Below are positions 10,450-42,137 of a stretch of DNA of 64,000 bases, piece after piece. Both the position numbers and the translations under genes were made by a program. The stretch is from the IMG/VR virus record IMGVR_UViG_3300010430_000003, positions 124,001 to 188,000 of that record; one strand, written 5' to 3'. Numbering within the stretch: position 1 is the stretch's first letter; each line of letters opens with the position of its first letter. Under the pieces are notes generated by a model that was not told the DNA's origin, did no database searches, and saw nothing but the letters and a program-made list of their open reading frames with translations.

Positions 10450-10934
10450 AATATATACTAATCGCCACTGCCCTTCTTGCCTCTTGTGGCTCCTTACCGG
10501 GTAAGACCTTGGTTGAAAAGCATCTCTTAATGTCTGTTGAAGACTTTGAAGGGTATATGGGGGTTGAAGTTAACGCTGACATCTCTGTGCGACGTTCTAA
10601 GTTTTTTCAATTATATAAAGAAGAAAAGTATAGAAATAAAAATGTCAGTGTGGTTGCGTTGTGTTTATTTGAAGAGAATAAAATTATCTTCAATGAAGAT
10701 GTGATTGAAGAACTAATAGCAAAAGCAGAAAAGCCTCAATATGAACTGCAACCAATAGTATATCATGAATTGGGTCATTGCATGTTTGATCTTAAACATG
10801 ATGTTGCCGAAGTATTTGAAGGTGTTCCAGCTTCATGGATGCACCCTGTTTATCAGGAAAAGCGAAAGTGGGATGTGTTGGGACATGACCATTACAAACG
10901 AGAATTTAAGTCCAGAGCTTTGAATGAATATTAA
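10446..10934 (+). CDS. putative lipoprotein zinc metallopeptidase
   Basis: MKYILIATALLASC lipobox; YHELGHC....H and S.M.P Met-turn-like motif. Confidence 0.7.
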   Translation: MKYILIATALLASCGSLPGKTLVEKHLLMSVEDFEGYMGVEVNADISVRRSKFFQLYKEEKYRNKNVSVVALCLFEENKIIFNEDVIEELIAKAEKPQYELQPIVYHELGHCMFDLKHDVAEVFEGVPASWMHPVYQEKRKWDVLGHDHYKREFKSRALNEY

Positions 10935-11550
10935 AATTGCCTTCACTCTTTTAAAGAGCCACGCTTTGCGTGGTATTCTTGGTGAAGAGTATAGACCTGT
11001 TTATTCTGAAGAGGAAGATCCTAATTTCTTCATTAGGAAATATGCTAGAGCTACCTTATCTGCCCTCGCTCTTCATGGTGAGGAGAATGTTGTGTCAAAA
11101 CAATTCAAAAGAACAGTGAGTATATCTGAATTGTTCAATGGTAAATATGTTGCCATGCGTCTTCCAACAGATGAAGACATGCAAGTGTGGAGTGTTAAGA
11201 AGAAAAGTGAAGAGACTATCGATTATTTGCTCTTTGAAGACAAAGACGGAACTTTCAAAATGATCCCCGGCGGGGAGGTTATCGCTGAAATTCAATTGAA
11301 GTGTTGTGTTGGAGCAGTGGAAGGGTTTGTAGCCTGTCCAGACTTTCATGGTGGAATTACTGATCAAATTCTTCTTTCTTATACAACAAAACTCCCACAA
11401 GATTTTGAAGTTAGTGATAAAAAAGTAACCTATTTGAAGAAAACTGTTAGTTTTAAAGGTGTGTTTTCAGCGGCATGGTTTCTCTATTCTGTTGTTGCTG
11501 TTGTGTATATCATCGCAATCTTGATTGACATGCTTGGGTATAATATATAA
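10924..11550 (+). CDS. hypothetical membrane-anchored protein with MNIN-like N-terminal module
   Basis: MNIKIAFTLL start, internal GAGGAG plus GTG at ~11093, C-terminal transmembrane helix. Confidence 0.55.
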   Translation: MNIKIAFTLLKSHALRGILGEEYRPVYSEEEDPNFFIRKYARATLSALALHGEENVVSKQFKRTVSISELFNGKYVAMRLPTDEDMQVWSVKKKSEETIDYLLFEDKDGTFKMIPGGEVIAEIQLKCCVGAVEGFVACPDFHGGITDQILLSYTTKLPQDFEVSDKKVTYLKKTVSFKGVFSAAWFLYSVVAVVYIIAILIDMLGYNI

Positions 11551-11553
11551 ATG

Positions 11554-17566: not shown

Positions 17567-17568
17567 TT

Positions 17569-18132
17569 ATGAAAGATATCAATAAATTCATCGCAATGCA
17601 ATTTTATGAAACACACGGAGCACTCATTACAAAACAAATTAAATGTGGCATTCGAGAGCCTTTCTATCTCATGGAAAGAGAAGAAACGTTAAATGAAATA
17701 TTGTCGGAAATTTCTAACACGTTGCTTCGTTATCCAAAAGTCTCTCTTCTTCTTGTAAAATGAATATTAAAATTACATTTCATTTTATTTCCTCGTTCGA
17801 TTATGTCGAAGACATGCTTGAAAGTAGTGGGGTGATATTTGGTAATCGAGTGTCATATAGTAAAAGGAACACGGGCTTTCACAATTGGATTTATGAAGAT
17901 TTGGAAGCACTTAGAAGAATTTTAAATGAACATTAATCACAGGATATTAATACTATTTCTTACATCATTTACGTCTCCTTTAGATTGGAGTCGTGATGGT
18001 GTCGTGATGTATTATAGAAGAGATCCCTTTTCAGAAAGGTTTGCGGCCCCCACCATGCTTGCGGCTTGGATTAAAAGTGACCTTCAGGGCTTAGAAGTAT
18101 TCAATTCATACAAAAGGAAGAAAAATGACTAA
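17569..18132 (+). CDS. three MNIN-family small proteins (17569-17763, 17760-17936, 17926-18132)
   Basis: MKDINKFIAMQF, MNIKITFHF, MNINHRILILF; overlapping junctions. Confidence 0.6.
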
Positions 18133-19200: not shown

Positions 19201-22200
19201 GCAATAGCTCTCTCTACAATAATCGATTGATTGCTTATATGATTCTCACCAATGTGAAGAGGGTACGCAAAGTCGGCAGTTTGCTTCTATGAGGATTTTT
19301 ATTCATATCCATGTTAATACACTAAATAAATTAACTCAATGACCATTAATATCATTATCGCTTGGAAGACTATATATGGCAACTCCCCCACTTTAGATAA
19401 ACCACTGTGGCTTGGCAATTCAATTGTACAACTTAATTCGCACGACAAGTATTTAACGTGGATTCACAGAATGTCATATTTTAGGAAAAAAAGATTTGAC
19501 GAGGCAACATATACTTGAAATCTTCAAACGTTAATTTAGAAGTAGCAAGGGCTTGGGTACAATCTTCTCACGGTTGGAAGGTTGGAAAGAGAAGAAGCTA
19601 TAATTATTTTGAAGGCGGTTATTTTTCTATCGGAAGTTTAGAGTTTTTTATTAGAACAGCAATTTCATATACGAAACATGTGTATACGAAACACATATTA
19701 CGATTACATAAATGAATATCAACTTGATCATTCGAAATATGATTACATCAGAAATTATTTTCTTATATACTCATCATGATAAAGCAAATGATATTATGTT
19801 ATGGGGGAAAAGATACCTTCACGTTCTTGAAAAAATGAAAATGGATAGTCTGATCCACTATTATATTCATAAGTCCCTTAAGGAAGTATGCAAAAGACTT
19901 CTCAACAGATAAACCTCTTCGTTGCTTTTATGTGGTTTAACTCTCATAGACTTGATAGGATACCAAGGAGAAGATCTTCTTTTAGGAGATGGCCTTGCGT
20001 GTATCCTGGAATACTACAGAAAGAACTCAGACATGAAGCGTTAGACTTTAAGGCGAGAGTTGGCCATGAATATCAATATATTAATTGCGAAGTCTTATGT
20101 GTGGAATTTCAATGCTTTTGACGTGACATGTGAAAGATATAATATACTTCACAATCCGATAGATAGTTATTTCAATAATTTGATTATGTCCGACATTTCT
20201 GCGATGATGTATACTAGGACTCATTATATGAGAATCGCAGCATATATAGCAAAATGAAAGACAATATCAATCTTCAAGTGATGTCATTTTTCCTTTATTC
20301 AGAAATAGAGGTGCTTTTCTGTAAGGCCATAAATGAAAGAAGATATAAGTATAGTAGGGACATCGCCACCTATTATCCATATGATATAGAATTTTCTTTG
20401 TCTTCTCTTAAAAAAAGGGAAAAGAATGAATGAAATGATAGCATCATTCTTAATAAACTCTGGATATTCTTTAGTCTTGTCCAAAGCCACGGGTTTCTCT
20501 AGGAGAGGGACATACCCAGATTGGAAGTTCTATACTCACAATTCAATAGTGCGTCTTATGCTAAGAATGAACAACAGTCCGCTTAAATGTAGAGATTGGA
20601 ATGATTGATACAGCCATTAACATTGCGATTGCAGGGTCAATCTTCACAGAAGTGAATATATTCATGGTAAGATCATCCCTAAAGAGGGAGAGAGTAGAAA
20701 GACATTGGGTCTTTTACCACATCAGGAAGGGTAATTATCGACGAGATGAATATATCGTTGTGAAAACTCGTGCTTTTGTGGGGCGCAACCCTTGAATTAT
20801 ATCAACAACATATCAGATATCAATATAATGATTGCCACAATTATATTGGATAGAATTCCTTATGGTACGAGGCGATATTTTATAGAAAAGAGAATTAAGA
20901 GATATATGTCATATGCTCAATGGGATTCTCGTTTCGTGCTTGGTGAACCTAAACGCAGAGAAGATTATGTTTTGGGAAAAACAAGACGGGTTCGATATAT
21001 CCTTAAACGTAGACAATAATATCAATATCATAATTGCATCTCGTTTTTTGCATGCGTGGACTCAGCAGAGCTGTACATTCTCAGCCTCTGAGAGTAGATC
21101 ATATTCTACATGGTCTCTAGCCCATGTTAAAGGTTCACAAAAATACAGAGCAGATTATTTATATAAATTAAGTTTGTTTAGATTAAACAGAGTGCAAGAA
21201 TGTGAATCATAATTTAATTATTGCAACTCGCTGTCTCCATTATATTAAATGGAGTCATGATGAATACAGAACATGGCCACTCATCACTTCATATTCTAAT
21301 TGGGTTCACGAGTTTATTCATGGAACTGATGAATATCGAATTGGCTATAACATAGAATACGTTCGGGTTTTGAAAACAAGAATGAGAGAAAACCATGGGA
21401 ATAATAAATGGGCTAGGTGGTGGAATGAATATTAACGTCATTATTGCTTCAAAGTTTTTCAACACTTTTGGAGCAAAAGCAGGGGATATGCAACCAATGT
21501 CAAAGAGTTCATATTCTATATGGTCACTCCTCTTTGTTAAAGGTTCAGAAAAGTATAGAAAAACTTATCTTTCCAATCAAAGTCCAAAGATGCGAAGATG
21601 GATGTCATTGGAGATATTTGATAAATGAACATCAATTTAATCATAGCGGGCCATGTCTTCAAAGAGATAAATATGTATATGTTCATGTTGGAACCAGAAC
21701 ATCTTACTTATATTCGAGGAGAAAGAACAGAAAGTGATTTCATGGTTAGGCATATAGTTTGGCAAGGAATCATGTCAAGGTATATTAAGGGAAGAGTGAG
21801 GATTTTCCATGTTTCATATCCACCAACCAGATTATGAACAATTCAAATGTTAACGGAATATTGGCTTGTTGTTATGTTGGAGATATTGGCCTCAACCTTG
21901 TTGAGCCTAAGCTGATAAGTTATAGATCTCGCATAAGAATGTTTGGTGCATATGCCAGAGATGAATATATCAGGAAAAGAACAGAGCACTTCAAAATAAG
22001 ATATTCCAAATATGAACATTAATATCATCATTGCAACTCATATCTTTACGGAAGTGAGCATATATTATTCTCCAACCGTTAATAATTTTGTGTATCCCAG
22101 ATCTCAGCTTGCACTACACCCTGATCTTGTTGCATATACAAGATATATGAAAAGAGCAGCAAGAAGATTCTTGGAAGAATATCCAATAACATGAATAGTT

Positions 22201-24883
22201 CAAATATCAATATCATCATTGCTCTTCTTATCTTCGATGAAACAGGTGTCAATTTCATTCCGTCTTGTTATAGTAGGTCCAGAAGTCAAATGAAACCAAC
22301 AAAATTATTGCACTACAAAGATTATATAGGAATACAAATGCACCGATTCCATGAGAGATATCCAATACCATGAATAACAATAGATTGAATATCAATATGG
22401 TGATTGCAATCAATATCTGCGCATCAGCAGACATTATGTATTTGAGAGAAAGAAAAGAAAAAGAAGTAAAGCTTAAAGGAAGACTTACAGTGATCAAAGC
22501 CCGCATTGCTTCTTTATTGTTATGGAATCGCTGTCGCTATTTCCATAGGCAATTCCCAGTTGATCATGAATAACAATTCAATCAACATGTTCATTGCCGC
22601 TCATATCATTTCAAGCATTGATATATATTACATTAAGCAGATAGGAGAGTTTATATACCCCAGAGGACATATCAACTCACAGAGATTCATATATTATAGA
22701 GAATATATACATCAAACTTGTCGAGCCTTCGCCAAAATATATCCAATGGACTCAGAAAGGTCTAACATGTTCGACGAAGTAACAGTGCAATGAATGATTC
22801 AAATATCAATATGTTCATCGGTTTTCATGTCTTTTCAGACACAAATATATATCACGTTGTTCGGATGGGGGAGTTTATCTATCCTAGAAGAAAAGCATAC
22901 TCATATAGATTCTCATTTTATAAAGAATATGTATGGCAAGCAACGCGACGCTTCGCATCATCATATCCAATACAATGCCATGAATAATTCAGAAATCAAT
23001 ATTGAAATATGCAACAACTTCGTTTCAAGAGCAAGCAATGGTTCTATAAGATTCTATATGCATAGAAGTTCAATGTATTATAGATTATATGGGTATCAGG
23101 TAAGAACGAACAAAATAACTATCTATACAAGAATATTCTTTCAACCAATAATGAAGTATATGATGGAAGAGCATCCAACGGTTATTAAGCAGGATGCGGA
23201 ATCACAGTATATACGGTGGAAGATGTGGAAACTGACAGAGCGAGCAGAGAGGATTCTAAGAAAGTCATTCATTTAGATAAGGGTTTATCTATAAGGTAGT
23301 GTGGAATGGATTGTGTGGGTGTGTGCTTGGTTAGAAGGGAACGACCGGAGGGAGTGTAGTAGTTGATTCTAGCACTGTAACTCAGGAACAAAGTAACTAG
23401 GAATAACAGAGATGAAAAGAGACATAATTAATCAAATAATAGCACAAACATTATTCGTAACCCACATTCAAGAAGTGTGGAAATATAGACTAACTTATCA
23501 TAGAGGAACATATAAATATTATGAAGGGTTAGGTGATATCCTTCCTTTACCAAGAATAGCAGAAACAGTGTTAATTGATAAAGCCTCACACCTCAGAAGA
23601 AAACCATGATTGATACAATTGTAAACTGTCATATTGGGGCATTGATATCATATCAGTTTTCGAGATCGCACATATTGCATGGCGATCTCCCCAGACCCAG
23701 ATTAACACTATCCAGTTATTTTAATGTTAAGAGCAGAAGAAGCATGGGGTATCAATGGTTAGTGAGAGAATTATGAACATTAATATCCAGATAATGAGTT
23801 TTATGGTTAGAGAGTTCTTCTTCTATCCAAACACTGTGGTCTTTGAAAGATATGTATATTATGACTATGCAGATGTATTGGCATTCTATCAAATAGATAT
23901 TAAAGATACTTTGATTAAGTATAGGAAATTAATGTGAATGTTGAGATAGCAATACGGTTTCTTGAACCACTAACAGATGCTACCATGTTTTTGAATAGTG
24001 CTAGCACACGATATTCATTATCAGAGCCTTGCCACTCAATAAGATCAGAGGAGGTGAGATTTTTTAAGAAAAGCTTGAAATATTACTATGAAGTGCAACA
24101 ACAATGAATATTAACATTATGATAGCAAACTGTTGGTTGGGGCCATTCACATATTCCAGTATGTATTTGAACAATTGTTATAAGAAATATAGCATTATTC
24201 GTTATGGATCTGCCATCGCTGGACGCTTCTTAAGAGAGGTTAGATATCATTTAAATAACCTTTTGATAGCTGATAAATGAATATCAATCAAATGGTGGCA
24301 TATGCATATATTCGATCTTATTGGTGGAGAAACATCAGACCTATCACTGATAGGTCGAGTTTACAATGGCAAATAGAATGGATAAATATAACTGACTACA
24401 TCGAGGAAGTTGAGTACCATATTTCCTCATTACCTGATACCACTTACCCAGTACCCAGGTAGGGCTCGCCCACATGCGCACACGCATAACACACACACAT
24501 ACGCACATATGTGCAATAGGTGAACAATGAAAAAGATATTAAAGAGCAAACAGAAAGGCGTTCATTATTCCAATCATAAGAGCACATATGAAGAAATCAT
24601 AACATTAGTGGCCATTGATGTAAGCCATGCAAACATTAATCTATTGATAACAGAGAAGTTCTTTAAATCAATGATCAATAATGGATCACTGTTTACTTCA
24701 AAGTTATTTCGTCCGCCCTATCCAAGATATAATCCAGCTGCTATCATGAGACATCATAGTTATGCTTGGGCTTGGCAAACAATTATTAATGAGAATGTGC
24801 TACTTAATGTGCATTCCTGCGCCAGAACAAATATTAACTATTTGCATAGGTTAGGAATTAATCAGAATTTATCTCATTGTTAA
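19197..24883 (+). repeat. tandem array of ~28 paralogous MNIN-family small ORFs
   Basis: starts at about 19197, 19339, 19515, 19712, 19888, 20066, 20254, 20426, 20601, 20792, 21007, 21202, 21425, 21625, 21834, 22012, 22191, 22370, 22566, 22790, 22980, 23412, 23606, 23773, 23934, 24104, 24277 and 24527 (motif internal); each carries (I)NxxIA-type motif, ~180-230 bp period. Confidence 0.85.
24470..24515. repeat. alternating purine-pyrimidine (CA/CG) low-complexity tract
   Basis: CACATGCGCACACGCATAACACACACACATACGCACATATGTGCA. Confidence 0.7.
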
Positions 24884-29800: not shown

Positions 29801-32800
29801 TCTAAACTCTTTCTCAATAAAGTGTTGTATTCAAAAATGTCAGTCATCGTTTTCCTCCGGCAATAACACGCCCCAATATAGTGCGCACCATCCTTCCATT
29901 AACACCAACTCAATATCCTCACCGTATTCATCAGCAAGCTGTTCGGCAATGTTTGCAAGCTCTTTGATGGTGATTCTATCCCACTCACTATCAGGAAGGT
30001 TTTTGTAAATTCGTTTCCATTTCGTTTTCTTCATATAAATATTATATCAAAAATCTGTGCAGATTCAAGAATAATTAAATATCGAATGTTTATGAGGTCG
30101 ACGTTCGCCGGGCATTCGCGTCTGCAGCCCTTACACGACATGACAAAATATAGATAGTTCTTTCTAATTCTTGAAATTTAAAATTTTTAATATAATCAGT
30201 TCTATCTGCACACAACCTTTTGTGACTTATAAAAGAACGAACCCAATTATTATCGATTGATGCAAGAAACATGTGAGTTAAAATCAAATTATGATTCATA
30301 TAAAATCTCGCATGCAACAGCGTTATAATAAAGTTGAAGAGGTTGCTGTTTATGAAATCTATTATAGCTTCTTCTTAAGAGAAGATAATCTTGCGTTAAT
30401 GCATATGAATCATTTATATACGCATATGCCACAATTAAATTCACATTAGTGTTCACATTCTTTCACGGTGTATGTTAAAGTTGTTTCTCGTGTTTTGGGA
30501 TCATCTCATCTCCTTAAAAAATTTCATCATAATGATTGATTACAGGAAATCCTGCATCTGCTATCCTTCCTCGTATTTCAGCATAGAACAATATATCTTC
30601 TTTATTCCGTGCATTGCAGCCACCGCTATGATCGAGACCATCAGAAACCATTACAGCGGAGACATCCATATCAGCTTTCATCTTCCCATAATCACCATTC
30701 CAAGTCCCTTTTATGGGTTCAAATCCCATTACATAGATTGCGTAATCAGAATCAGGTGATTTTGTGATATATAGATTTTCTGTATCGTAATCTCCTCCGG
30801 GTGAATTGATTTCAATGTTGCAATCAAAATCATCAAAGAGATCAATAACTTCTTGTGTTTTCCATCGTTTCATTTTCTTCTCATACTTGAAATTAAAAAA
30901 GGCACCCCTGTTCCGGCCATAAGTACAACTGTTAAAGCTGTGCGTTCACCAAAAGTGATTGCAAAGTCTGCAAAAAGAGCAATGATTGAAACCCCAATTA
31001 TGCATGAAATAAGCGTTGTGAATAAACCATCATTCTCATTTTCTTTTTTCATCTCAAAGTCCCATGAAGATTTGCAATCTTGATCGTTTATTATGAAGAA
31101 TCATAGAACAAAAATCACGATAAGCATATTTTATTCTAATCTCACGATATGAATGATATTTCTGATAGAAATCCATTTCAACTTGAGTCTTCCATATTAC
31201 AGGAACTCCTTGAATAACCATATTATACCCAACACACAAATTTATCATTGTATCTTTACACATTTATATTTTTCAATGTTCGCAAATAAGAAGTGAGCCA
31301 ATTCTCAACTTTATTGTGATAAAAGAAGCTAGAACAAAAATATTTTGGCCAATAAAAACTATCCCATGATGTGAATCCGAGCACTTCTATTGTTGTCGTT
31401 CTTCTAAGAAAACGATCACGCACAACTTTATTAATATCCATATTTTTTAAAATGCCTAAAGAAGATTTGAGGACGAAAGCAATTATATTTAAGCATGGAT
31501 TGATAATTATCATATGAACAGTAAACATCTTTCATTGAATAACATTCCAACGGTTCAAAGGGATAGGTAGGATGCCACCAATACCATATTAATCGGTTAG
31601 CAAGAATAGTATTAATATTTGAATTCATTGATTTTCAACATATAATGTTCATACCATCTTTTTAACCACCGTTCACCACAATTAATAGGATCAGTATATT
31701 CTCTAAAAAATATCAAGAAGTGACTTCTACCTTTTCTTGGGTGACTTTCATAACCGACACCGGGAAAATTTCTATCACCTAAATTAAAATTGGGATTGCT
31801 AGGTGAATATAATTCCAAATATATTCGGCAGGCTAGAAGTTGATTGATGTTGGAATTCATCGAATTTCAATTAGGGGAATGAAAAACAAAACAATAGTTA
31901 GGAATTGACCATATTGGTCCATCTTCATAAACCCACGCATATGTTTCATTCCCTTCCATTATAAAGGAATCATATTGATATGTGATTTTAAAATCATGCC
32001 ATGAAAACCATGTAGTTAAAAACTTTGCGGCAATGGCATAATTAATTTCTTGCGAGGTTGGATTATACTTTGGAAAGATGTTATACATCTGAACAAATCA
32101 GAATGATATAACAATTCCACAATTCTTTAACCCACTCATGTTCTTGAGGTGTTAAATCTTTCATTATACTTCCGTAAGATTGCACATAATATCTTCTGCG
32201 AATCGCTTGTTGGAAATTACACTACAAATTTCAGTAATCTCATCACAAAAAACATCAAAAGCCTCTTCTCCTTCTTCCCAAAGATTGAGGAGAAGTTGGC
32301 TTGCTTCATTCCCAACAGATCGTGTGGGCCAAGCAATATCGTATGCTTCTAGGTGATCATGACCTTCATTCGCCGCATCAACAATAATTCGAGCAATGAG
32401 TTTAACATCGTCGAGCGATTTAATTCCAAATTCAAACGCTTCTACAGAACTTTTGTCTTGAATAGAATACGTTCCAAACTCCATATAAATGGGGAAAATA
32501 TAATCAAGATATTCTTGTGTAGTTTTGATTTTCACTTATTATTCCTCGCAGTTTCGTTTTGAGAAAATTAATCCAATTTGAATGCCAATTAATAGTTTCT
32601 ATTGCTTGATAATATTCCCATGCGCAATAACGCCGAGATTTCAGGTCAATATCATAATACTCTCCATCTCTAAAAAGCATAATAGCAATATATTGATTAA
32701 TCATGGTGTCATTCATGCTAACTTGCTGATTCTAATGCCCAATAAACACACCGCCATAAATCTTCAACCCATTCTCGCTCATCTGCAGAAATGGCTTCAT

Positions 32801-33113
32801 TGTCAGGATCAATTGCCATTCGGAACCATTCGGGTTCAATATCTCCCCAACCTCTTTCTTCGAGCGTTTCATAAAAGGTTTGCAAGAAGATGTTTGTCTT
32901 TTCATTCATGTCAGGCTTAGGAACATACATCACCCATCGCTCTTTGGCAAAGAAAGCGAGTTTATCATTATCATTTCTTTTGCAATTAAAACCATTGGTT
33001 TCATGAACTTTTGTAAATTCAATTAACATTGAACCTGATTCACCTTCATCAAGGGCAATAGAGAAAACATCACCAACTTCGAGATTTTCAAACTTTACTT
33101 TTTCCATTATCAT
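26849..33113 (-). CDS. block of ~25 small genes: acidic hypothetical proteins alternating with MNIN-family ORFs (family members 27141-27356, 27353-27559, 27902-28090, 28090-28332, 30090-30299, ~30290-30456, 31054-31263, 31256-31441, 31431-31628, 31612-31860, 31867-32088, 32504-32716)
   Basis: ORF track plus N-terminal motif; all on the - strand with overlapping junctions. Confidence 0.6.
30041..30068 (-). promoter_or_regulatory. sigma70-like promoter
   Basis: TTGAAT-N16-TATAAT, 6 nt before the ATG at 30034. Confidence 0.65.
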
Positions 33114-33171
33114 CCTTTTTCATAAGATTTAAAATTACTTCTTCTTTTTTCATTTTAAAGCTCGCAAAGAT

Positions 33172-33245
33172 TGGATATCAACTGAGGGTTTCGAACCTTC
33201 ATCCTCCCCATCACAGGGCACTTTACCACTTAAGTTAAGTTGATA
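33172..33245 (-). ncRNA. tRNA-like RNA with shortened anticodon arm and encoded CCA
   Basis: TATCAAC/GTTGATA stem, D arm TAACTTAAGTGGTAAAGT, CCC-TGTGAT-GGG mini arm, GGTTCGAAACC, 3' TCCA. Confidence 0.6.
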
Positions 33246-33321
33246 GACGGCAGGCAATCTTGTATCCTAGACAACGCCTGCCTAAGTTTAGTGTCTTTCA
33301 GCACTTCGCCACGTTTAAGTT

Positions 33322-33437
33322 GCATCATTAGATTAAAATCGTGCGTCCTTCCTTTAGACGACAGGAACATAAGAAAGAAAGTTCCCGGTGGGATTCGAAC
33401 CCACATACATTGATTATTTTGATGAAACATTTGATGC
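33322..33437 (-). ncRNA. circularly permuted tRNA-like RNA (YrlA Y-RNA-like), copy 2
   Basis: order T arm GTGGGTTCGAATCCCAC, CGGGAAC, loop, GTTCCTG, D arm GTCTAAAGGAAGGAC; ends pair GCATCA/TGATGC. Confidence 0.7.
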
Positions 33438-33490
33438 GAAGATAACACTTGGTTGCTCAATTTTGGAGTAAGAATTTCATGTTAATAAAG

Positions 33491-33579
33491 AACTGACTGC
33501 TGCCTCTACCAATTGGGCTACCCGCCCCCAATTTATGGGCGGAGATGGATTCGAACCACCACTGACACAATCTTTAGTT
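33491..33579 (-). ncRNA. circularly permuted tRNA-like RNA (YrlA Y-RNA-like), copy 1
   Basis: order T arm GGTGGTTCGAATCCATC, TCCGCCC, loop, GGGCGGG, D arm TAGCCCAATTGGTAGAGGC; closed by GATTGT/GCAGTC and AACT/AGTT. Confidence 0.75.
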
Positions 33580-33643
33580 GACAAGAAACTTGAGCTTGCT
33601 ATGTGCCTGCACCGATCTTTCGGTGGTCTTAGGCACACTCCAT

Positions 33644-34384
33644 TTATTGTCCGAAGACAAAGTTGAAAAGTTTATCACCAATCTTCTTGGTTTCCACTTC
33701 TGTTTCATTTGCATTGCAGCGAGCTTCTTTAACTGCAATTCGCAGTTTTGCAATCTTTTCAGTCCATGCTCGCTTTTGATTTTGTGTAATCCCTCCATGT
33801 TGCTGAATGGCAGTCCATACACCTTGGATCACATCTTCAGTGATAAGTTGTGTTTGCGCCGGATGTTCGGGAGTTGCATCGTAAAGGACAATTGCTCTCT
33901 GTACCTTTTTGGTGGAGTTTCGATGTTCCGGGTTGGAAACAAAGATCTTTTCATTGCTTGAGGATGGTGTCCATTCTCGATCTGTTCCCAACACAGGTGC
34001 GTGTCGAACAAATGTTTCAAGGTCTTCAAATTGCTTCTCAAGGAATAGCAATAGAGATACAGGACAATCGTGTACCAACGTCTCGCCTTCTACAACGATA
34101 TCAGAAGAAGCCTTTACGTTACCATAGTCCTTAGACGCTGTGAGGTCAATAAGGCGCACTGTTGCCTCTTGAAAGTCTTCTACGGCGTCTTGCACCGTCA
34201 TTTGAACCCTTGCTACTTCATCTGGCAATTGTTCGCCTTCTTCGTCCTTTGGTTCATATTTCCGAACCATGCCAGTGAACAGGGCTTCCTTTTGGAGTTT
34301 CTTATACAGTTCAGTCCTTGTCCTTTCAAGGCGTTTCTTTTCTGAACTTTCGACGGCTACAATTTGATGCAGTTTGCTTGACAT
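33644..34384 (-). CDS. conserved hypothetical protein (KLHQIVAVE family)
   Basis: 246 aa, GAGG RBS; LF.G..R.Y.PKDEEGEQLP, LLFLEKQ, VLY.AT.EHPAQ and AVK.AR..AN motifs seen in bacterial and phage homologues. Confidence 0.8.
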   Translation of the reverse strand: MSSKLHQIVAVESSEKKRLERTRTELYKKLQKEALFTGMVRKYEPKDEEGEQLPDEVARVQMTVQDAVEDFQEATVRLIDLTASKDYGNVKASSDIVVEGETLVHDCPVSLLLFLEKQFEDLETFVRHAPVLGTDREWTPSSSNEKIFVSNPEHRNSTKKVQRAIVLYDATPEHPAQTQLITEDVIQGVWTAIQQHGGITQNQKRAWTEKIAKLRIAVKEARCNANETEVETKKIGDKLFNFVFGQ

Positions 34385-34436
34385 TTCAAACCTCTCTTGT
34401 TTTGATAAGTTTCAGTTTCATAATCTTGATAATAAA

Positions 34437-34464
34437 ATTATATTATTTTTTGAGCAAATTTCAA
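34437..34464 (-). promoter_or_regulatory. sigma70-like promoter for the 34384 gene and downstream RNAs
   Basis: TTGAAA-N16-TATAAT. Confidence 0.65.
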
Positions 34465-34474
34465 TGACAATATA

Positions 34475-36672
34475 TTAATATCTTCTATTGGCATTGGCAA
34501 TAATGATAGGACATGAGATCATTTCTGAATATGAAGAGGACTTGAAAAAAATTAGGTGATAATACCAGAAAATATCTCTTTTTTGAAATTTAGCCCAACC
34601 AGTTAAATTTCTTAATAAGAAGAAGTCATGATTTAAAGGTCGCAAACAAAAAATACTATAAATACTATATGATGATAAAACGGTGTTTTGCAATACACAA
34701 TGAGCAATATATTTATTCACATAATGGTTATTCATAATTAACAGTTTTTATTTCACCATCCTTTGTGTCAAGCCAGTCCCACAGTCGATCATCACCACGC
34801 ATTATTACCAAATACGGATCAATCCAACCACATGTTAATTCTCCATATGTTCTAGCAACACAATAAGAATGAGTGTATTCCATGATTTTAAAAGTAAACA
34901 TGGAACGAATCATTCTTGTAAGAAACATTTTATATATTTCTTTATTTAAGTTCATGTCTTCATCTCTTAAATAAATTATACTGTTTTCTGTACAGAATTC
35001 AAGAACAGTATTTTATCAAACGGTGTAATGTATCGTCTTTAATAATTCTCGCCCACTCGTTTTGGTCTTTAATGTGAATTGAGGCGAACTTAAATCTTGT
35101 GTAAGGTCTTACCTTATCACTTTCGAGATGGGAGAAAATTCCGTAGAACTGGAAGACTTCGGAATAATAAAAATCTGCAAGAATATATCCTCTTGCTATT
35201 TGATTGACATTCATCATCTTCTCTTTACAATGGTGAGGTCTTTCGAATCAAAGAAAGGTATGGTTCCATATAATCTTTTAATCATTTCTTCATAATCTAC
35301 ACTGCGAACTGAAAAGGAAATTCTATCACAGTTTAGATGATTTGTAAAACTATATAAAATTTGAGGTTCTGCCATAAGAATAAATCTGGCGATTTGCACG
35401 TTAATTTTAACAGCATTCATACTTTAATCTTTTCTGCTGCTCTATGAATTCTCTCCTCAAGATGATCATGGTCTTCATCTAAATCAAGAATAATTCCTTC
35501 TAATTCCTTCTTCTTTGTTCTCAACCTCTTTATTTCTTTTGCCCTTCGATCAAGAAGAATTGTGCGATACCACATATCCCTTTTTGGAACATAAACTTCT
35601 TTTTCTTCACCATCAATGAATCTTATTGTATGGGTATGAGGAATGACTTCTTCGATTTTTTCCCATTTGTAATAATTACATGTTTTTTGTTTCTTTGTTT
35701 GCTGAATATCCCAAACAGGCGAATCATGATCAAGATCAGCTATAGCAACTTCCATATCTTTTTGCCAAAGATATTCAATTATGGAGTAATTGAATAAAAT
35801 AGATAATCCAAGCGCAGCGGCGAAAACTGCAATTATGGCTATAATGAATAACATTTATACCCTTAATGGTTTGGGAAATCATTTAAATTGAAATCTTTAA
35901 AATCAACTAAATCTAAAGAAGAAATAGACACTTTTTTATTCAATGGTTTTCTCATTCGATTTCCACGTTTATCATATAAAACACGAACTTCCACAATTTG
36001 TTCTTTATCATTTGTACAGGTATACCACCAATGCTGATTTTGTCTTACATAAGCTTCCCCAAACCATCTTGCTTTATGGTTACTTCTAACCTCTTGACCC
36101 CACACTAAAGGTTTGTGTGGAATCCTTTTCAGAGAGGAAACAGCATAACTTAATTCAGATTCTATATCATGTGATATGAGAGTGTATTGGAATTCGCATG
36201 ACCGATTATTTGAAACCCACCTTTCTCCAAGAAATCCTCTTTCATACATTAAAAATGTATACGCAACCTTTTTATTAATCATTTAAATTTAATCAATTTT
36301 GAAGAACTGTGTGTTAAAAATGTATGTACATTTTTATACATAATGTCAGACATATACTTACGAGTAAGAGTTGTATGACTAATTGTCAATCTACCGGGAC
36401 TTGGAGTTGACGACCAAATATATTCCCACTCTGATGAGATCATCATGAAAGCCACTTGAAAATTAATTTTCATTTTGAGTCAATCTCAAATTATTTGTAT
36501 ATTCTTGCATAAAATGCATCATATATATCTCGAAAAAGGTAGAGGAATGATTAGTGTAGAGAAAAGAAATAGAGTGCTCCAAAAAGAGCTTTGAACCAGC
36601 CATCGCTACATTATGATGATTCGAATGAAATGTTATAGAATACATTACTTTTATTCGAATTATCTTATTCAT
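34475..36672 (-). CDS. seven MNIN-family ORFs (34475, 34728, 34999, 35214, 35863, 36279, 36463) and a membrane-anchored protein (35417-35854)
   Basis: VNKYIAHC, MNLNKEIYKMF, MNVNQIARGY, INVQIARF, MINKKVAYTF, INFQVAFM, MNKIIRIKV. Confidence 0.6.
34975..35002 (-). promoter_or_regulatory. sigma70-like promoter
   Basis: TTGAAT-N16-TATAAT. Confidence 0.6.
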
Positions 36673-36678
36673 CTGAAT

Positions 36679-37746
36679 TCACACCCACGCAGAGGTATAT
36701 AGAGAACTTGCATAGCCTCTTCGTGTGAAGGTAACCTTTACACCCTCTTCAGAAAGATAGGTATATGTGTATTTGTCATCATTGATATCAGAAAGATTGG
36801 AAGGATATAGAATGACTGACTCACTGTGACCCCAATAACCTTCTCGAACATCTTCAGCTTTTTCATTCCATTGAAGAAAGATATCTATCTCTCCATTAAA
36901 AATATCTCCGTAATGTGATGTCTCACGGTAAACTCGCCCGTCTTTCTCAGCAAGAATTTTGTAACTATATTCTTGATTGCCAAAGGAAACGTTCAACATG
37001 TCCAAAACTTCTTTGGCAGTTTCATTATATCGGTTCATTTCTTCAACCATTGCTTGAAGCATATCAAAGTTGAATTTCCCGTTAATTTTTGCAAGGCGAA
37101 GAATTGATTTAATTTCATTCTTATCATTAAGGCGTTCATTGCAATATTCGAGAATCGCATCTTCTTCCAAACCTTTATAGTCAAGGTTATAAAACAAGCG
37201 ACCGGGGCGATTATTCATATTTTTATCAATGCCCCATTTATCATTGGCAGTCAAAAGAAACAGTCTTTTTCCTGTGAAAACTCCATCAAGAAGAGTTAGC
37301 ATTGCTTCCTGTTCTTCCTTGTTATAAACCTTTTCAAATTCATCAAATAGAACAACAGCAGGTTCATCAATTGACGCAATGAAAGAGTTAAAGATCTCTC
37401 CGTGAAGAGCACCATTAACAACAATTGTTGATACCCCTTCTTGAGCCAATGCCACACTAATTTTCTTGGCAAGGAGGCTTTTGCCAGATCCCTTTTCACC
37501 AACCATTAATACTCCTGTACTTTCTGTACGAGAGTTAAATGTATTGATAATTCTGTCAGAGCGATCACAAATATTGCCATAAAACTTTTCAGGGAGTATG
37601 AAATCACTCATCTCTTCCAGATAGTATTCACCTGAAATTGGATTAAACTTAACTAGATAGTTCCCGACGGGCAGCTTCTTGCGGATATCAATTGCACTAT
37701 CAGGAGTTACTATAAAAGTGTTACCATTCTTGATGTAATTTGTCAT
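36679..37746 (-). CDS. AAA-family ATPase
   Basis: Walker A GEKGSGKS, Walker B VLFDEFEK, LLDG, LT.N, NRPGR; likely start MTNYIKNG. Confidence 0.9.
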   Translation of the reverse strand: MTNYIKNGNTFIVTPDSAIDIRKKLPVGNYLVKFNPISGEYYLEEMSDFILPEKFYGNICDRSDRIINTFNSRTESTGVLMVGEKGSGKSLLAKKISVALAQEGVSTIVVNGALHGEIFNSFIASIDEPAVVLFDEFEKVYNKEEQEAMLTLLDGVFTGKRLFLLTANDKWGIDKNMNNRPGRLFYNLDYKGLEEDAILEYCNERLNDKNEIKSILRLAKINGKFNFDMLQAMVEEMNRYNETAKEVLDMLNVSFGNQEYSYKILAEKDGRVYRETSHYGDIFNGEIDIFLQWNEKAEDVREGYWGHSESVILYPSNLSDINDDKYTYTYLSEEGVKVTFTRRGYASSLYTSAWV

Positions 37747-37759
37747 TGTTTGTCCTTTT

Positions 37760-40700
37760 TTATAAACAATATACTTGTGATTCTTGGTTAGAAGCTGTTG
37801 AGTCAAAAATGAATGTCTCGCCATTATCCCAACGAGTATCTCTCAAATACCGATCCACTTCTTCATCAATAAGCAAATCGTTAGGCACAACAGAGAGGTA
37901 TTTTGCGATATCCACAACCTCTTTATTCTTTAAGGCTCCTTCCTCAATTTTCTCTAATCCATTATAGGACCAATGATTTTGATGTAAAAGATAGTGTGTT
38001 GGAATCATCGCGTTGATTAATTCACAAAGCTTAACTTTATTGCTTGTTAGGGCACTATTGCCATTATTAGAAGCATATTGAATGCTCCGAAGAATTCCAT
38101 TCCAAGTATAATAAAAATCATTGTCGCCGGTTACGATTGCAAGCTTTTTCATATATCTCCTTTGTTGGAAATATTATATTAAAATTTGAACGAAAAACAA
38201 CAAAACAATATTAATGAAAAGCTTTATAAGAAAGCTCGCAGAAAAGACCTTTATGAGTACAATGATACATGGTGGGTTTTTTAAGTTTATTCATCATCTT
38301 TATTCTTGAAGATCTGTCACATAGATACTTGGAATGAATTTCAAATGAATGATGTTTGATCAATCCGAAGTGCGTGAAATGGTTCCAATCAAAATCGTCA
38401 TGCATGAAAAACCCTGCAATCATTAAATTAATGTAATTCATTATCAAACTGTCTCATTGCATGGATGCAAACTCTAATTGAACTGTGCAAATATCCCTCA
38501 TACCATTCAATAAATGTTGTATATCGATGATCTGATATACAAGAACCTTCTCTAGCAGAGTTGTTCTTAATATCAGGAAGTTCGTAATCTAATACAAAAC
38601 AATTGGAGACCAACAAGTTAATGTGATTCATAACCCTTTAAATAAAACTTCATGTTTTGGATATTTATCTTTTATAAAGGAATACATTGAGAACTTTTCA
38701 GGCATTAGATACAAGCTTTCTCTTTGAGAAAAAGGTATAACCTCCTTATTGACACGGAAGTGAATCCAATCAAAATCATAATTTATAAAATATATACTTA
38801 TCATTAAATTGATATTATCAATCTTGGCTTTCATTGTCCCTCCATGGCAAAGGGTCAAATGTAGCCCAAGGTCTTTCCGCTTTAAGCAGCTCGTGAAGTT
38901 CTTCAGTATTTTGTTCAGCAATTTCCCTTGCCACCTTTAAGTCTTTTTCCAAGACCTTGATTCTGATTCCAGAAGATTGTTTATATTTGTTGTAATCATT
39001 TTCAATTTCATTGTGAACTCGAATCATTTCATGCCAATTAACGACGGCAGCAACAAAATGCCCTCTCAATTCATCCTCAGACATATTATTAGCATCATTT
39101 TGAGTTTCTTTTAATAACTTGTCATATTCTTCATCAGTCATGCTTTTCTCTTAGTAAAATTCTTACTTTCATATACACAATTGCCATATTTAGAATAATC
39201 AAATGCCATTCTAAACCACCTCAAATAACCGCAATTTGTTCGAATTGTTCTCTCATTTAAAAAATGAAAGCGACGGCCTCTCCCCAACAAAAAATTCACG
39301 GAAAGCAGTAATGTATGTACTATACAAATATATTCTTATAAATTCAAGATTATGGTCAAGGCCGAACTCCTCAACTGTATTGCTAATTTTTGTTATGATT
39401 ATTATATTAAAAAGTGCGGGATATTCAATAAAGAATAAAAGGTCGGGTGTTAAGCGTTTCGTTCGAAACACCTGTAAGCATGACATCAATATTATTCCGT
39501 GGATATAAATCAATCCAACTAAATCTTATTTCTTTGTAAATTCGTTCGAAGGTGTAGAATATATTAACAGAATCATGAAGCAAATAGGCATAGTTATGTC
39601 CTCTCAAGGCGCTTCTATGAAAAAAGAAAGAAATCTGTTTATTTATATTCATTTGATAAGTTGCTTATAATTTGCGGCGACCAAGTCGGAATTTTCTCCG
39701 CAAAGCCAAACTTCAGCCGTTGCTTGAATTGTTTCTTCACCAGCAGGTTTCCAACCCTTAACTCGAATTTTAGCTTCAAAGCTCAGTCTACCATTTTCAT
39801 GACTTACAATAACATCCGATAAATCAAGTCTTGGGGAAGTCGTCCAGTGACCTTCATCATATGATGCAATTGTTAAATCACCAATTATAAGCCAAGCTTT
39901 TGAGACCCAGTCTAAATTCCATGTAAGTGAAGCTAAATGTATGCTGCCATCAAACTCATCCCAATGCTCAGGTGCATCTGTCCACATCTTTGTCTCAAAT
40001 CTATTTTCAATAGGGAGTTTTATTGGAGTTTGTTGTGTGGTTGTTGTTAGAGTTTCAACAATAAGATCACAATATTCAAAATCGGGAGGATCGGGAGGAT
40101 ATTCAATAAAAGTAGAACCACAACTTGTTAGAAACAGTATTAATACAAATAACAATAATTTCCGAAACAAATGGTAAGCCTCTTATATATCCTTTTTAAA
40201 TAGGATTTTTAAAAGACTTATATCGAATATTTGTTTTACAATACCTTTAAATCAACATGTATTGCAACCCTTTTTCATAAAATCGAGAACTTCGATTAAA
40301 TAGGTATCAAAATGATTAAAATATCTATCTCTTACCAAGTCTAAAGTTATACAAGATTCATGATGGCTATAATTATCAAGAAAAACAGCGTATGGGAAAG
40401 AATAGTATGCATTCATATGAACGTTCCATGATTCGCGAAATAATCTACCCTTAGTTCCACCTAAAAATCTCTTGCAAATTAAAAAATTTATATTCATTTA
40501 TAACCTTTAAACCATCTTTCAAACCATGTTGGTTGACGATCATGCCAACGAACCTCTATTTTAGAGATCTCATTAGGTTCCCACAATGTTTTATATATTT
40601 CTTTATAAGTCAAATTAACAGAATCAACTCTCCACACAGGAATCTTAAGATAAGCCCCAAGAATTTCAAACATCTCTTCTTTGGAAAAGATTAGAATAGA

Positions 40701-42137
40701 TTTCTGTTTAACCAAATAATATTTCTGTGGCAACTGAGAAGTCGGTCTGGGATCAAGAAATTTGAGTTTCTCGTGAGGGCCAAACATTGTTTTAAAATCA
40801 CTTGTGCTTAGATATTCTTTTTGTAAAGTAACCATCATTCACCGATATTCAGAATCATGCCAGAACAGTTCAATATATTCCTCGTATTTATCTTTGTGAA
40901 GATATTTGCGAAGATTGGCTTTTCCTTTAGCCCTATCCCTCTTCACCCTTCCCCGCTTGTAACATTTTATGGATTTGCGTGTATGAGGACTCACTAATCG
41001 CTGCCCCCACCACCTACAAAGAACAGTAAGAGTGATAAAATTCCAAACCACCAAGACAATTCAATATTAAAGAAAACGATTGGTTCTCCATATAACCACA
41101 TAATCATCCATCCAATGGCAAATCCGATGGCAAATCTAATGGCGTACATTACAGCGGCAAAAAGGAGAACCGTAAGAAAAGCACCAACCCCGAAAAGTAC
41201 TGCAAGAACAGGTGTGAAGTAAGGCTTCAGAAAATCATAACTGCGTTGATACCAAGTTCTAATGTGGTGCATAATTGTTATTCCTTTGAAAGAAGAATAT
41301 AAGGTTTTCATAGTAAGTATTTCCACTCGCCGTAAAGTTTTTAACTATTGTTTCATAATAAATTGCAGAGTTTCTAAACTTATCATTTGATACGAACATT
41401 TTATCTGCTGTCAGGCGATGCCAGTTGCAAATGTAAAGGACATAGGTTCGTGCTATGATGATATTAATATCGTTTGATTCCATTTAATTTAGCCAGCAGT
41501 GATTTGTTTTTATTTCTCAATAACAGTGAAATATTGTGCTTTATATATTGAGGATATCTTTGGAGTTTCTTCAAAGCGGGACATGTCTTTCTTGAAAAGC
41601 CATGGGAACCATTTTTGTAAATCTTATGACAACCGCTATATAGAAAAATATGAGCAACAAAAATATTAATATTATTCATAATATAATCTAAAATCTAAAC
41701 AATTTGTTGAAATCAATTCAATTTCAAATTTAGGAATATAAGAAATGAATTGTTCTTGTCGCAATTCAATTAATTCTTTTTCAACAATTGTTCGCAATTC
41801 ATAAATACCTTTAGTATTTGCTTGAAGCGCAGTACCATTTTTCCTCTTAAAGAGGAGATATTTGTTTAAAATTTGAACGAGTTGTGCATAAAGCTGTTTA
41901 TAAGTTAAGAATGGACTTTTCATCCTAAAAAGAACCCGAAAAATCAAATATATTTGAGACCCACTCTTTACTATAATATATCAGTTGTTGATTTTCAAAC
42001 AGTTGTTGATTATAACTTCCATTTTTATCAAGCCACCACACCACACAATTTCCCGCATTATCAACTTCTTTGACATACATACAAATATCACGGTATTCTC
42101 TAAGACATACTTTATCTTTTTTATGAAAAATAATCAC
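37760..42137 (-). CDS. block of small hypothetical genes with MNIN-family members at 38211, 38428, 38628, 39425, 40252, 41259 and 41464
   Basis: INLMIAGFF, INLLVSNCF, INLMISIYF, MNINKQISFF, MNINFLICKRF, INIIIARTY, INIFVAHIF. Confidence 0.6.
39649..40170 (-). CDS. putative lipoprotein
   Basis: FRKLLLFVLILFLTSC lipobox signal peptide. Confidence 0.6.
   Translation of the reverse strand: MFRKLLLFVLILFLTSCGSTFIEYPPDPPDFEYCDLIVETLTTTTQQTPIKLPIENRFETKMWTDAPEHWDEFDGSIHLASLTWNLDWVSKAWLIIGDLTIASYDEGHWTTSPRLDLSDVIVSHENGRLSFEAKIRVKGWKPAGEETIQATAEVWLCGENSDLVAANYKQLIK

What the first reader, a model, noticed from the sequence alone, without database searches (positions are those of the whole stretch)
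10924..41679. The family's start sequence ATGAAYATTAA carries stop codons in both other frames: a universal translational-coupling plug
Seen: ATG AAT ATT AAT reads TGA in one alternative frame and GAA TAT TAA in the other. Upstream genes do end inside it: ATGA overlaps (19712, 21625, 22191, 22370, 22790, 24104, 24277) and 11-nt overlaps ending ...EY*/EH* (10924, 17926, 21425, 22012). Most members lack an obvious Shine-Dalgarno. Inference: a unit beginning this way terminates and re-initiates from an upstream gene in either shifted frame, which could explain part of the motif's conservation and how copies spread through operons.
Basis: partly seen in the sequence, partly recalled or inferred. 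Interest (0 to 1): 0.62.

Follow-up and report, generated by a model that had tools for sequence, protein, structure and literature searches.

The report
Stop codons hidden in gene starts
In a 210-kb marine-sediment phage, about 80 small related genes are packed so tightly that each upstream gene usually ends on a stop codon lying inside the next gene's start, but those stops are a by-product of the conserved Asn-Ile-Asn protein motif in an AT-rich genome, not a separately selected signal.

Summary
All 11 cited junctions exist. Family genes overlap their upstream neighbour far more often than other genes do (66/81 vs 104/228, p=1e-8), and they have almost no Shine-Dalgarno (SD) sequence (median -2.4 vs -5.4 kcal/mol; random -1.0).

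The idea that the stops help conserve the motif is not supported:
- The TAA-making Ile codon ATT is used in 10/20 canonical starts, against 59-64% genome-wide.
- Synonymous resampling predicts as many or more out-of-frame stops than are seen (10 vs 12.9; 40 vs 39.6).
- ATT is equally common when the motif lies inside the protein (19/33 vs 12/22).
- Variation sits at third codon positions, and nothing upstream of the ATG is conserved.
- More than half of members carry the N-I-N-x-x-I-A core 1-40 residues after the start.
- TGA needs only an A after ATG, yet Asn fills 54 of 70 such starts.

Best reading: an orphan, tandemly expanding family of ~65-aa helical proteins whose N-terminal helix motif happens to supply stops at +4 and +8/+11. 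This lets compaction yield short overlaps, which probably permit local termination-reinitiation. That is a family-specific case of a published general rule. Interest is low to moderate.

The parts
19339..24462 (+). Tandem array of 27 family genes (54-98 aa). Nearly every junction is a stop-start overlap of 4, 8 or 11 nt; the exceptions are overlaps of 25, 53 and 56 nt and one 135-nt gap.
   Evidence: ORF tiling and translations; junction table; no sigma-70-like promoters or terminators above shuffle expectation inside the array
10924..10934 (+). ATGAATATTAA: start of a 208-aa MNIK... gene. The TAA at 10932-10934 ends the upstream gene 10530-10934 (11-nt overlap, ...EY*).
17926..17936 (+). ATGAACATTAA: start of family gene 17926-18132. 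The TAA ends family gene 17760-17936 (11-nt overlap, ...EH*).
21425..21435 (+). ATGAATATTAA: start of family gene 21425-21628. The TAA ends family gene 21202-21435 (11-nt overlap). This is one of the few members with an SD-like GGTGG (-7.1 kcal/mol).
22012..22022 (+). ATGAACATTAA: start of family gene 22012-22194. The TAA ends family gene 21834-22022 (11-nt overlap).
19712..19715 (+). ATGA overlap: family gene 19515-19715 ends and family gene 19712-19912 starts (Ile3 = ATC, so there is no +2 TAA).
21625..21628 (+). ATGA overlap between family genes 21425-21628 and 21625-21837.
22191..22194 (+). ATGA overlap. The downstream gene starts MNSSNIN, so the core motif is displaced by 3 residues.
22370..22373 (+). 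ATGA overlap. The downstream gene starts MNNNRLNIN.
22790..22793 (+). ATGA overlap. The downstream gene starts MNDSNIN.
24104..24107 (+). ATGA overlap: 23934-24107 ends and 24104-24280 starts.
24277..24280 (+). ATGA overlap: 24104-24280 ends and 24277-24462 starts.
22980..22987 (+). ATGAATAA: an 8-nt overlap (upstream ...HE*). This is the M-N-N variant of the same effect. Other 8-nt overlaps are at 20426, 20601 and 22566.
20066..20121 (+). Counter-example. This canonical MNIN gene uses ATC for Ile3, so the frame +2 upstream gene 19888-20121 runs 56 nt into it.
27902..41679 (-). Minus-strand family members interspersed with other genes. ATGA overlaps are at 40494-40497, 39649-39652, 38628-38631, 36279-36282 and 35417-35420. 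11-nt overlaps are at 36463-36473, 31431-31441 and 30289-30299. There is an 8-nt overlap at 41672-41679 and a 1-nt TAATG overlap at 28090.
5586..5846 (+). Free-standing canonical member, 19 nt after tRNA-Ile(TAT), with an SD-like leader (-6.1 kcal/mol). Its out-of-frame stops are present but unused.
10258..10449 (+). Free-standing canonical member, 19 nt after tRNA-Met(CAT), with a leader similar to that of the 5586 gene. Its stops are unused.

Best explanation
The window comes from a 210-kb, SD-using phage found in marine-sediment metagenomes. It carries an orphan family of small helical proteins: 34-35 genes by a strict HMM threshold and about 81 by a relaxed motif search, with a median length of 67 aa.

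The members share little beyond an N-terminal core x-N-I-N-h-h-I-A-x-x-F/Y, one conserved Tyr, and a basic C-terminal helix. The core is conserved as protein. It forms the first, best-predicted helix, with Asn, Ser or Asp in front of it, which I infer to be a helix N-cap.

Asn is AAY and the genome is 64% AT. An M-N start therefore always reads ATGA. The invariant second Asn reads TAA whenever the preceding codon ends in T. So the out-of-frame stops are by-products of the protein motif.

Their consequence is real but passive. When tandem duplication and deletional compaction push an upstream gene against a family start, the upstream frame closes within 4, 8 or 11 nt if it is shifted. A frame 0 arrangement would give a fusion protein and is almost never seen. 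The result is arrays of short overlaps.

The family has essentially no SD, and the array shows no sign of internal promoters in consensus scans. Part of its translation therefore probably comes from local termination-reinitiation at these overlaps (inferred). The rest probably comes from SD-independent initiation on the AU-rich, unstructured start region (inferred). SD-less reinitiation is inefficient, so it could not alone carry ribosomes through 27 genes.
For: Protein-level conservation:
- In the 20 canonical starts, information content is high at codon positions 1 and 2 and low at position 3. It is near zero from -30 to -1, with no SD peak.
- The core motif sits 1-40 residues after the start in about 60 of 81 members.
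- The AlphaFold2 model has four helices. The N-terminal helix (residues 3-14) is the most confident block, at pLDDT 85.

No selection on the stops:
- Ile3 is ATT 10, ATC 7, ATA 3, against 64% ATT genome-wide and 59% before AA.
- Under synonymous resampling, a +2 stop within 11 nt is seen 10 times vs 12.9 +/- 2.1 expected (canonical set), and 40 times vs 39.6 +/- 3.7 (all family).
- ATT at the core Ile is 12/22 when the motif is at the start and 19/33 when displaced (p=1.0).
- Residue 2 is Asn in 54 of the 70 starts with A after the start codon, although any A-initial codon would give TGA. In other genes Asn is residue 2 in only 21 of 247.

The overlap excess is largely explained by the N-terminal sequence:
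- Given A at +4, a 4-nt overlap occurs in 28/70 family genes and 33/111 other genes (my recount; the Fisher p of about 0.1 printed there used 119, not 111, as the non-family total).
- Early +2 stops go with frame +2 neighbours in both family genes (OR 3.6) and non-family genes (OR 2.4).
- Frame 0 adjacency is rare: 3 of 70.

Tandem origin: the closest paralogues lie 1-4 genes apart.

Features compatible with coupling:
- 81% of junctions overlap, SD is about random, and the starts are less structured than random sequence (-3.9 vs -6.2 kcal/mol).
- Promoter-like and terminator-like matches across the scanned region (16500-26500) are no more frequent than in shuffled sequence.

Published general rule: a 4-nt overlap needs only an A after the start codon, and overlap length is set by the first in-frame stop inside the neighbour (PMC3887535). 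Termination-reinitiation is local, and removing the SD usually lowers it by 60-90% in E. coli (PMC6728339, PMC10666635). SD-less genes rely on unstructured starts (PMC3121790).
Against: - Even given A at +4, family genes overlap more often in total (58/70 vs 63/111). Something beyond sequence capacity therefore favours abutment; it could be a need for coupling or recent tandem origin.
- Among canonical members, 4 of 5 with a frame +2 neighbour use ATT against 6 of 15 others.
- No RNA, ribosome-profiling or comparative data exist. No relatives were found and four metagenomes hold an identical sequence. Coupling, co-transcription and even expression are therefore unshown.
- Non-family start sites come from my own gene caller, although the subset with unambiguous starts gives the same answer.
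- Paralogues are not independent samples.
Confidence: 0.7

Rival explanations
1. On this view the start sequence is kept partly because its TGA and TAA terminate an upstream gene in either shifted frame and allow reinitiation. This selected property would have helped copies spread behind resident genes.
For: - Overlap excess is specific to the family's 5' end: 81% vs 46% overall; family behind non-family 73% vs non-family behind family 50%.
- The excess persists given A at +4 (58/70 vs 63/111).
- SD is near-absent.
- M-N starts recur even where the core motif is displaced (34 of 61).
- Single members sit with exact ATGA overlaps behind large unrelated genes, for example behind ORFs of 1140 and 308 codons outside the window.
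Against: - There is no synonymous bias toward the stops, and ATT is used slightly below expectation.
- Half of the canonical members lack the +2 stop, and one pays for it with a 56-nt overlap.
- Asn is preferred over other A-initial codons.
- The motif is conserved away from the start codon.
- Variation is at third positions only.
- The same association between early stops and frame +2 neighbours occurs in unrelated genes.
- Frame 0 is not covered.
Confidence: 0.12
2. The overlaps play no part in translation. They would be pure products of genome compaction and tandem duplication. Each family gene would be initiated de novo, without SD, on its AU-rich unstructured start, or the genes would be barely expressed.
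For: - The first gene of the array (19339) and several members after gaps also lack SD, so SD-independent initiation must exist for at least some.
- Starts are 82% AT over nt 4-15 and less folded than random sequence.
- SD-less reinitiation is inefficient in E. coli (PMC6728339), so it cannot sustain 27 serial junctions.
- Family codon usage is atypical: ATA is 37% of Ile codons against 16% elsewhere, and coding scores are low.
- PMC3121790 shows that unstructured starts suffice for SD-less genes.
Against: - Members after gaps tend to have better SD than overlapping ones (median -4.2 vs -2.4, not significant).
- The shortage of short positive spacers (4 of 81 at 0-10 nt, against 42 of 228 in other genes) suggests abutment itself is favoured.
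- Strict coupling was found in 13 of 14 natural overlapping pairs tested (PMC6728339).
Confidence: 0.25
3. The conserved 5' sequence acts at the DNA level, as a homology patch for recombination that duplicates, deletes or shuffles gene cassettes. On this view protein conservation is secondary.
For: - Closest paralogues are adjacent.
- Gene boundaries coincide with the motif.
- T4-type phages are reported to shuffle small early genes at conserved flanking elements (from memory, not checked here).
Against: - Synonymous positions vary at the genome's codon frequencies, and only about 8 of 12 bases are fixed.
- There is no conservation outside the coding positions.
- No structural variants were seen in four metagenomes.
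Confidence: 0.05
4. The small ORFs are not genes and the repeated start-like motif is a non-coding repeat.
For: Many members have low or negative coding-potential scores in my model. They have no homologues elsewhere.
Against: - 27 consecutive open frames of 54-98 codons tile 5 kb of 35% GC DNA with stop-start overlaps.
- The motif shows three-base periodicity of conservation.
- There is a second conserved Tyr and a basic C-terminal helix.
- Subfamily similarity reaches 47% amino-acid identity.
Confidence: 0.02

Closest known systems
Stop-start overlapping gene pairs with translational coupling by termination-reinitiation (ATGA, TGATG, 8-nt class; PMC6728339, PMC10666635)
   Same: The genes are co-directional and the upstream stop lies inside or next to the downstream start. 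Overlaps of 4, 1 and 8 nt dominate. The mechanism is local and needs no spacer.
   Different: - Here the downstream partners are about 80 paralogues whose shared protein motif supplies the stops.
- The 11-nt class is unusually common (12 of 81 vs 4 of 228).
- SD is essentially absent, whereas the phage's other overlapping genes keep one (median -5.5).
- Coupling itself is not shown.
Neutral models of unidirectional overlap formation (PMC3887535; also PMC2174442)
   Same: Overlap length is set by the first in-frame stop inside the neighbour, and a 4-nt overlap needs only an A after the start codon. Long overlaps are filtered out. The family behaves as these models predict.
   Different: The models treat genes as unrelated. 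Here one conserved N-terminal peptide fixes the stop positions for a whole family, so the overlap spectrum is quantised at 4, 8 and 11 nt.
Ambush (hidden stop codon) hypothesis and its composition-based rebuttal (PMC3700767, PMC5909447)
   Same: The question is the same: are out-of-frame stops selected, or do they follow from codon and base composition? The answer here is also the same: they follow from composition.
   Different: The stops here serve as the real terminators of neighbouring genes, not as traps for frameshifted ribosomes.
T4 internal proteins with a conserved capsid-targeting sequence (PMC3012670)
   Same: In both cases a set of otherwise very diverse small phage proteins shares only a short conserved N-terminal peptide.
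   Different: - No conserved Glu cleavage site follows the motif here.
- The motif is predicted to be part of the folded helical core.
- The copy number is far higher.
- No link to head genes was examined.
This is a resemblance only.

Membership tests
Translationally coupled overlapping gene pairs (termination-reinitiation) | Co-directional neighbours with the upstream stop overlapping or within a few nt of the downstream start | tested here: met
   66 of 81 family junctions overlap: 28 by 4 nt, 12 by 11 nt, 8 by 8 nt and 6 by 1 nt.
Translationally coupled overlapping gene pairs (termination-reinitiation) | Both genes lie on one transcript | tested here: inconclusive
   Promoter-like and terminator-like consensus matches in 16500-26500 are no more frequent than in shuffles. 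No RNA run holds the phage.
Translationally coupled overlapping gene pairs (termination-reinitiation) | Downstream translation depends on upstream translation reaching the overlap | not testable with these tools
   This needs reporter constructs with premature stops, as in PMC6728339 and PMC10666635.
Translationally coupled overlapping gene pairs (termination-reinitiation) | An intragenic SD upstream of the downstream start (common, but not obligatory) | tested here: not met
   Family ATGA-overlapped genes have a median of -0.9 kcal/mol, against -5.2 for non-family ATGA pairs and -1.0 at random positions.
Selected out-of-frame stops (ambush-type or 'plug' selection) | Out-of-frame stops exceed what synonymous codon usage predicts | tested here: not met
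   Observed 10 vs 12.9 expected (canonical) and 40 vs 39.6 (all family). ATT is 50-55% against 59-64% expected. Start-located and internal motifs do not differ.
T4-type capsid-targeting-sequence proteins | A short conserved N-terminal peptide on otherwise diverse small proteins | tested here: met
   Alignment A1: only N4 is invariant; I3 and one Tyr are at least 90% conserved; mean column identity is 16%.
T4-type capsid-targeting-sequence proteins | A prohead-protease cleavage site (hydrophobic-x-Glu) ending the targeting peptide, and presence of the proteins in virions | tested here: not met
   No conserved Glu follows the motif in A1. Virion content cannot be tested here.
Any curated protein family (Pfam, PHROGs, PADLOC) or solved fold | A significant profile or structural match | tested here: not met
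   No Pfam hit up to E=1. PHROG hits are no better than E=0.08. There are no PADLOC, Foldseek PDB or ESM Atlas hits. The only hits among 1.84 billion representatives are the phage's own proteins.

The most novel reading that the evidence does not exclude
The Asn-rich, SD-less start (ATGAAY...AAY) may be an adaptive 'plug-and-play' 5' end. A copy landing directly behind any resident gene in either shifted frame would then close that gene within 11 nt and borrow its ribosomes. That property would be what let this one orphan family reach about 80 copies, a quarter of the phage's genes. On this reading selection acts at the amino-acid level (choice of Asn), which is why no synonymous signal is visible.
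Probability: 0.1. Interest if true: 0.6.

Novelty: new member of a known kind. Interest (0 to 1): 0.3.

Why it matters
If the plug idea were right, it would give a sequence-level reason why one gene family can multiply inside operons. As it stands, the case is a clean worked example: a conserved protein motif in an AT-rich genome can fix where neighbouring genes end, with no selection on the stops themselves.

It is also a caution against reading function into out-of-frame stops without a synonymous-codon control.

The more unusual facts are side results. An orphan family makes up about 8% of a jumbo-phage genome. Its members lack SD in a genome whose other genes have one.

Tried and rejected
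- Relatives for a comparative test: megablast and tblastn against cultured phages found only distant sigma-factor and helicase homologues.
- The search for related loci with the adjacent sigma factor found nothing.
- A degenerate DNA pattern for M-N-I-N-x-I-I-A in IMG/VR gave 22 single hits. All were chance matches with no family-like ORF arrays.
- The word-indexed search and the exhaustive HMM search with the 35-member alignment returned only this phage's own proteins.
- Contigs carrying one member are 100% identical fragments of the same phage.
- Six marine-sediment DNA runs hold the array. The four that were laid showed no base differences, indels or joints, and no RNA run is on record. Polymorphism and expression could therefore not be used.
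- Function: Pfam, PHROGs, PADLOC, Foldseek against PDB and the ESM Atlas gave nothing. The AlphaFold2 model is only moderately confident (pLDDT 68.7).
- I tested whether an in-frame stop just before the ATG makes a 'three-frame' plug. Six of 20 canonical members have one, but across the family it is 9/81 against 33/247 for other genes, so it is not special.
- An alternative genetic code is excluded: all three stops are used, coding density is 95%, and there is no suppressor tRNA.
- My first gene caller missed many family genes because of their atypical codon usage. I added a motif bonus and hand curation.

Full report
**Source and setting.** The window is bases 124,001-188,000 of a 210,326-bp virus record with direct terminal repeats. 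It is about 36% GC. Under the standard code it is 95% coding, all three stop codons are used, and there is no suppressor tRNA. It encodes a helicase, an AAA ATPase and its own sigma factor. It has no close cultured relative. It occurs, base for base identical, in marine-sediment metagenomes. Its genes in general use a Shine-Dalgarno (SD) sequence: AAGGAG-like words and a G peak at -11 to -7.

**The observation.** ATGAAYATTAA occurs 9 times in the window against 0.43 expected, and 10 times in the genome, always on the coding strand. It reads TGA in frame +1 and TAA in frame +2. More exist than were listed. Plus-strand examples are 17760 and 23773, and the minus strand has many (for example 40494-40497, 39649-39652 and 36463-36473). 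Three of the cited starts carry only ATGAAT, not the full motif.

**What the family is.** An N-terminal HMM, iterated on all stop-to-stop ORFs, finds 35 members at E<0.01. With a relaxed motif threshold plus hand curation, the count is about 81 genes, 17.5 kb or 8.3% of the genome, with a median of 67 aa.
- Only about 20 begin exactly M-N-I-N/K.
- The rest carry the same core (x-N-I-N-h-h-I-A-x-x-F/Y) 1-40 residues after the start: MNSSNIN, MKDNIN, MNNNSIN, MKAKIDNIN and others.
- A 35-member alignment shows one invariant Asn, a near-invariant Ile and Tyr, a basic C-terminal helix, and 16% mean column identity.
- AlphaFold2 predicts four helices, and the motif forms the first and most confident one.
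- Pfam, PHROGs, PADLOC, Foldseek/PDB and the ESM Atlas give nothing.
- An exhaustive profile search of 1.84 billion representatives returns only this phage's own proteins.
- Where paralogues are still recognisably similar outside the motif, the closest one lies 1-4 genes away. The family therefore grew by local tandem duplication followed by fast divergence.
- The densest block is 27 genes at 19339-24462. Across the scanned region 16500-26500, promoter-like and terminator-like matches are no more frequent than in shuffled sequence.

**Is the overlap pattern special?** Using my own annotation (81 family genes and 247 others):

| Measure | Family | Non-family | Test |
|---|---|---|---|
| Overlap with same-strand upstream neighbour | 66/81 (81%) | 104/228 (46%) | p=1e-8 |
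| 4-nt overlaps | 28 | 33 | p=3e-4 |
| 11-nt overlaps | 12 | 4 | p=4e-5 |

- The result holds for the strict 34-gene set (27/34, p=3e-4).
- It also holds against non-family genes with unambiguous starts (55/106, p=3e-5).
- The effect belongs to the family's start, not its end: family behind non-family 73%, non-family behind family 50%, non-family behind non-family 45%.
- Family genes also lack SD. The median is -2.4 kcal/mol, and -0.9 for ATGA-overlapped members. Other genes are at -5.4 (and -5.2 to -5.5 for overlapping ones), and random positions at -1.0.

**Are the stops selected?** No sign of it.
- The TAA requires ATT at Ile3. Canonical members use ATT 10, ATC 7 and ATA 3. Genome-wide ATT is 64%, or 59% before AA.
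- I resampled synonymous codons for residues 2-6 from the genome's usage. The expected number of genes with a frame +2 stop within 11 nt is 12.9 +/- 2.1, against 10 observed. For the whole family it is 39.6 +/- 3.7, against 40 observed.
- ATT at the core Ile is equally frequent when the motif is at the start codon (12/22) and when it is internal, where no neighbour can end in it (19/33; p=1.0).
- Information content in the canonical starts is high at codon positions 1-2 and low at position 3. It is nil upstream of the ATG. This is the signature of protein-level constraint.
- The TGA needs only an A after the start codon. Yet Asn fills 54 of the 70 such family starts, while Asn is residue 2 in only 21 of 247 other genes. 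So it is the residue that is kept, not the stop.
- The ATC member at 20066 is invaded for 56 nt by its frame +2 neighbour.

**How much does the sequence alone explain?**
- Given an A at +4, 4-nt overlaps occur in 28/70 family genes and 33/111 other genes. This is my recount; the Fisher p of about 0.1 printed there used 119 rather than 111 as the non-family total.
- Genes whose upstream neighbour reads in frame +2 are enriched for an early +2 stop both inside the family (OR 3.6, p=0.011) and outside it (OR 2.4, p=0.011). This is a general filter against long overlaps.
- Frame 0 adjacency is rare (3 of 70). That is expected if loss of the spacer in frame 0 gives a fusion protein.
- An in-frame stop just before the ATG is no commoner in the family (11%) than elsewhere (13%).
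- All this matches published neutral models: a 4-nt overlap needs only an A after the start codon, and overlap length is fixed by the first in-frame stop inside the neighbour (PMC3887535).
- A residue remains. Total overlap given A at +4 is still higher in the family (58/70 vs 63/111).

**Mechanism.**
- Shown: the overlap architecture, the absence of SD, the AU-rich (82% AT) and weakly folded starts, and the protein-level conservation.
- Inferred: some translation by local termination-reinitiation. This is the rule at natural 4-nt and 1-nt overlaps (13 of 14 tested pairs, PMC6728339) and collapses within about 20 nt of spacer (PMC10666635).
- Removing the SD lowered reinitiation by 60-90% in most E. 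coli pairs (PMC6728339). Pure coupling could therefore not feed 27 genes in series. SD-independent initiation on unstructured starts (PMC3121790) must contribute, and it is needed anyway for the SD-less first gene of the array (19339).
- Free-standing members at 5586 and 10258, each 19 nt after a tRNA gene, keep a similar SD-bearing leader. Their out-of-frame stops are unused.

**Verdict.** The stops are by-products of a conserved Asn-Ile-Asn peptide in an AT-rich genome and do not explain its conservation. The case is a family-specific instance of a known rule. What is unusual is the family itself: orphan, about 80 copies, and SD-less in an SD-using phage.

Noticed in passing
window 5490-5566, 6931-7002, 10166-10238, 17493-17567; also 55573-55656 (-): The phage carries tRNA genes Ile(TAT), Arg(TCT), Met(CAT), Leu(TAA) and a second Met(CAT). 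Ile(TAT) and Met(CAT) are each followed after exactly 19 nt by a canonical family gene with a similar SD-bearing leader, and Leu(TAA) is followed after 1 nt by another member. Family gene bodies use the ATA codon for 37% of Ile, against 16% in other genes. ATA is the codon that tRNA-Ile(TAT) reads.
   Followed up: partly
whole genome; densest in window 3900-41700: The family has about 81 members by relaxed motif and 34-35 by strict HMM. It makes up 8.3% of the genome and a quarter of its genes, yet it has no detectable homologue in 1.84 billion representative proteins and no Pfam, PHROG or PADLOC hit. Its function is unknown. The arrangement of a shared N-terminal peptide on a hypervariable body recalls T4 internal proteins.
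   Followed up: partly
window 18355-19200 (+): A phage-encoded sigma factor (PHROG 351, E=7e-35) sits immediately upstream of the 27-gene array. Whether the array is under its control is unknown.
   Followed up: no
window 22012-23276 (+): A young subfamily still shares up to 47% amino-acid identity, with C-terminal ends of the YPI/FPV type. Its junctions switch between 4-nt (…YPIT*, …YPIP*) and 8-nt (…DHE*, …CHE*) overlaps, so junction type changes easily by small C-terminal changes.
   Followed up: partly
window 10924-11550 (+): A 208-aa protein begins with the family's MNIK-I-A start but is three times the usual length. It may be a family N-terminus fused to another domain. It has no Pfam or PHROG hit.
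   Followed up: no
window 45613-51444 (+): A very large ORF (1943 aa) follows the minus-strand block. It was not examined.
   Followed up: no
window 42134-42454 (-) and 43158-43829 (-): Pfam hits precomputed for identical contigs from other samples list a cREC_REC domain protein and a weak Methyltransf_11 hit among the neighbours of the family genes.
   Followed up: no
window 19200-24600: Four marine-sediment metagenome runs from 2017 carry the array with no base differences, indels or rearrangements. There is no population variation to exploit, and the runs may come from one site.
   Followed up: yes
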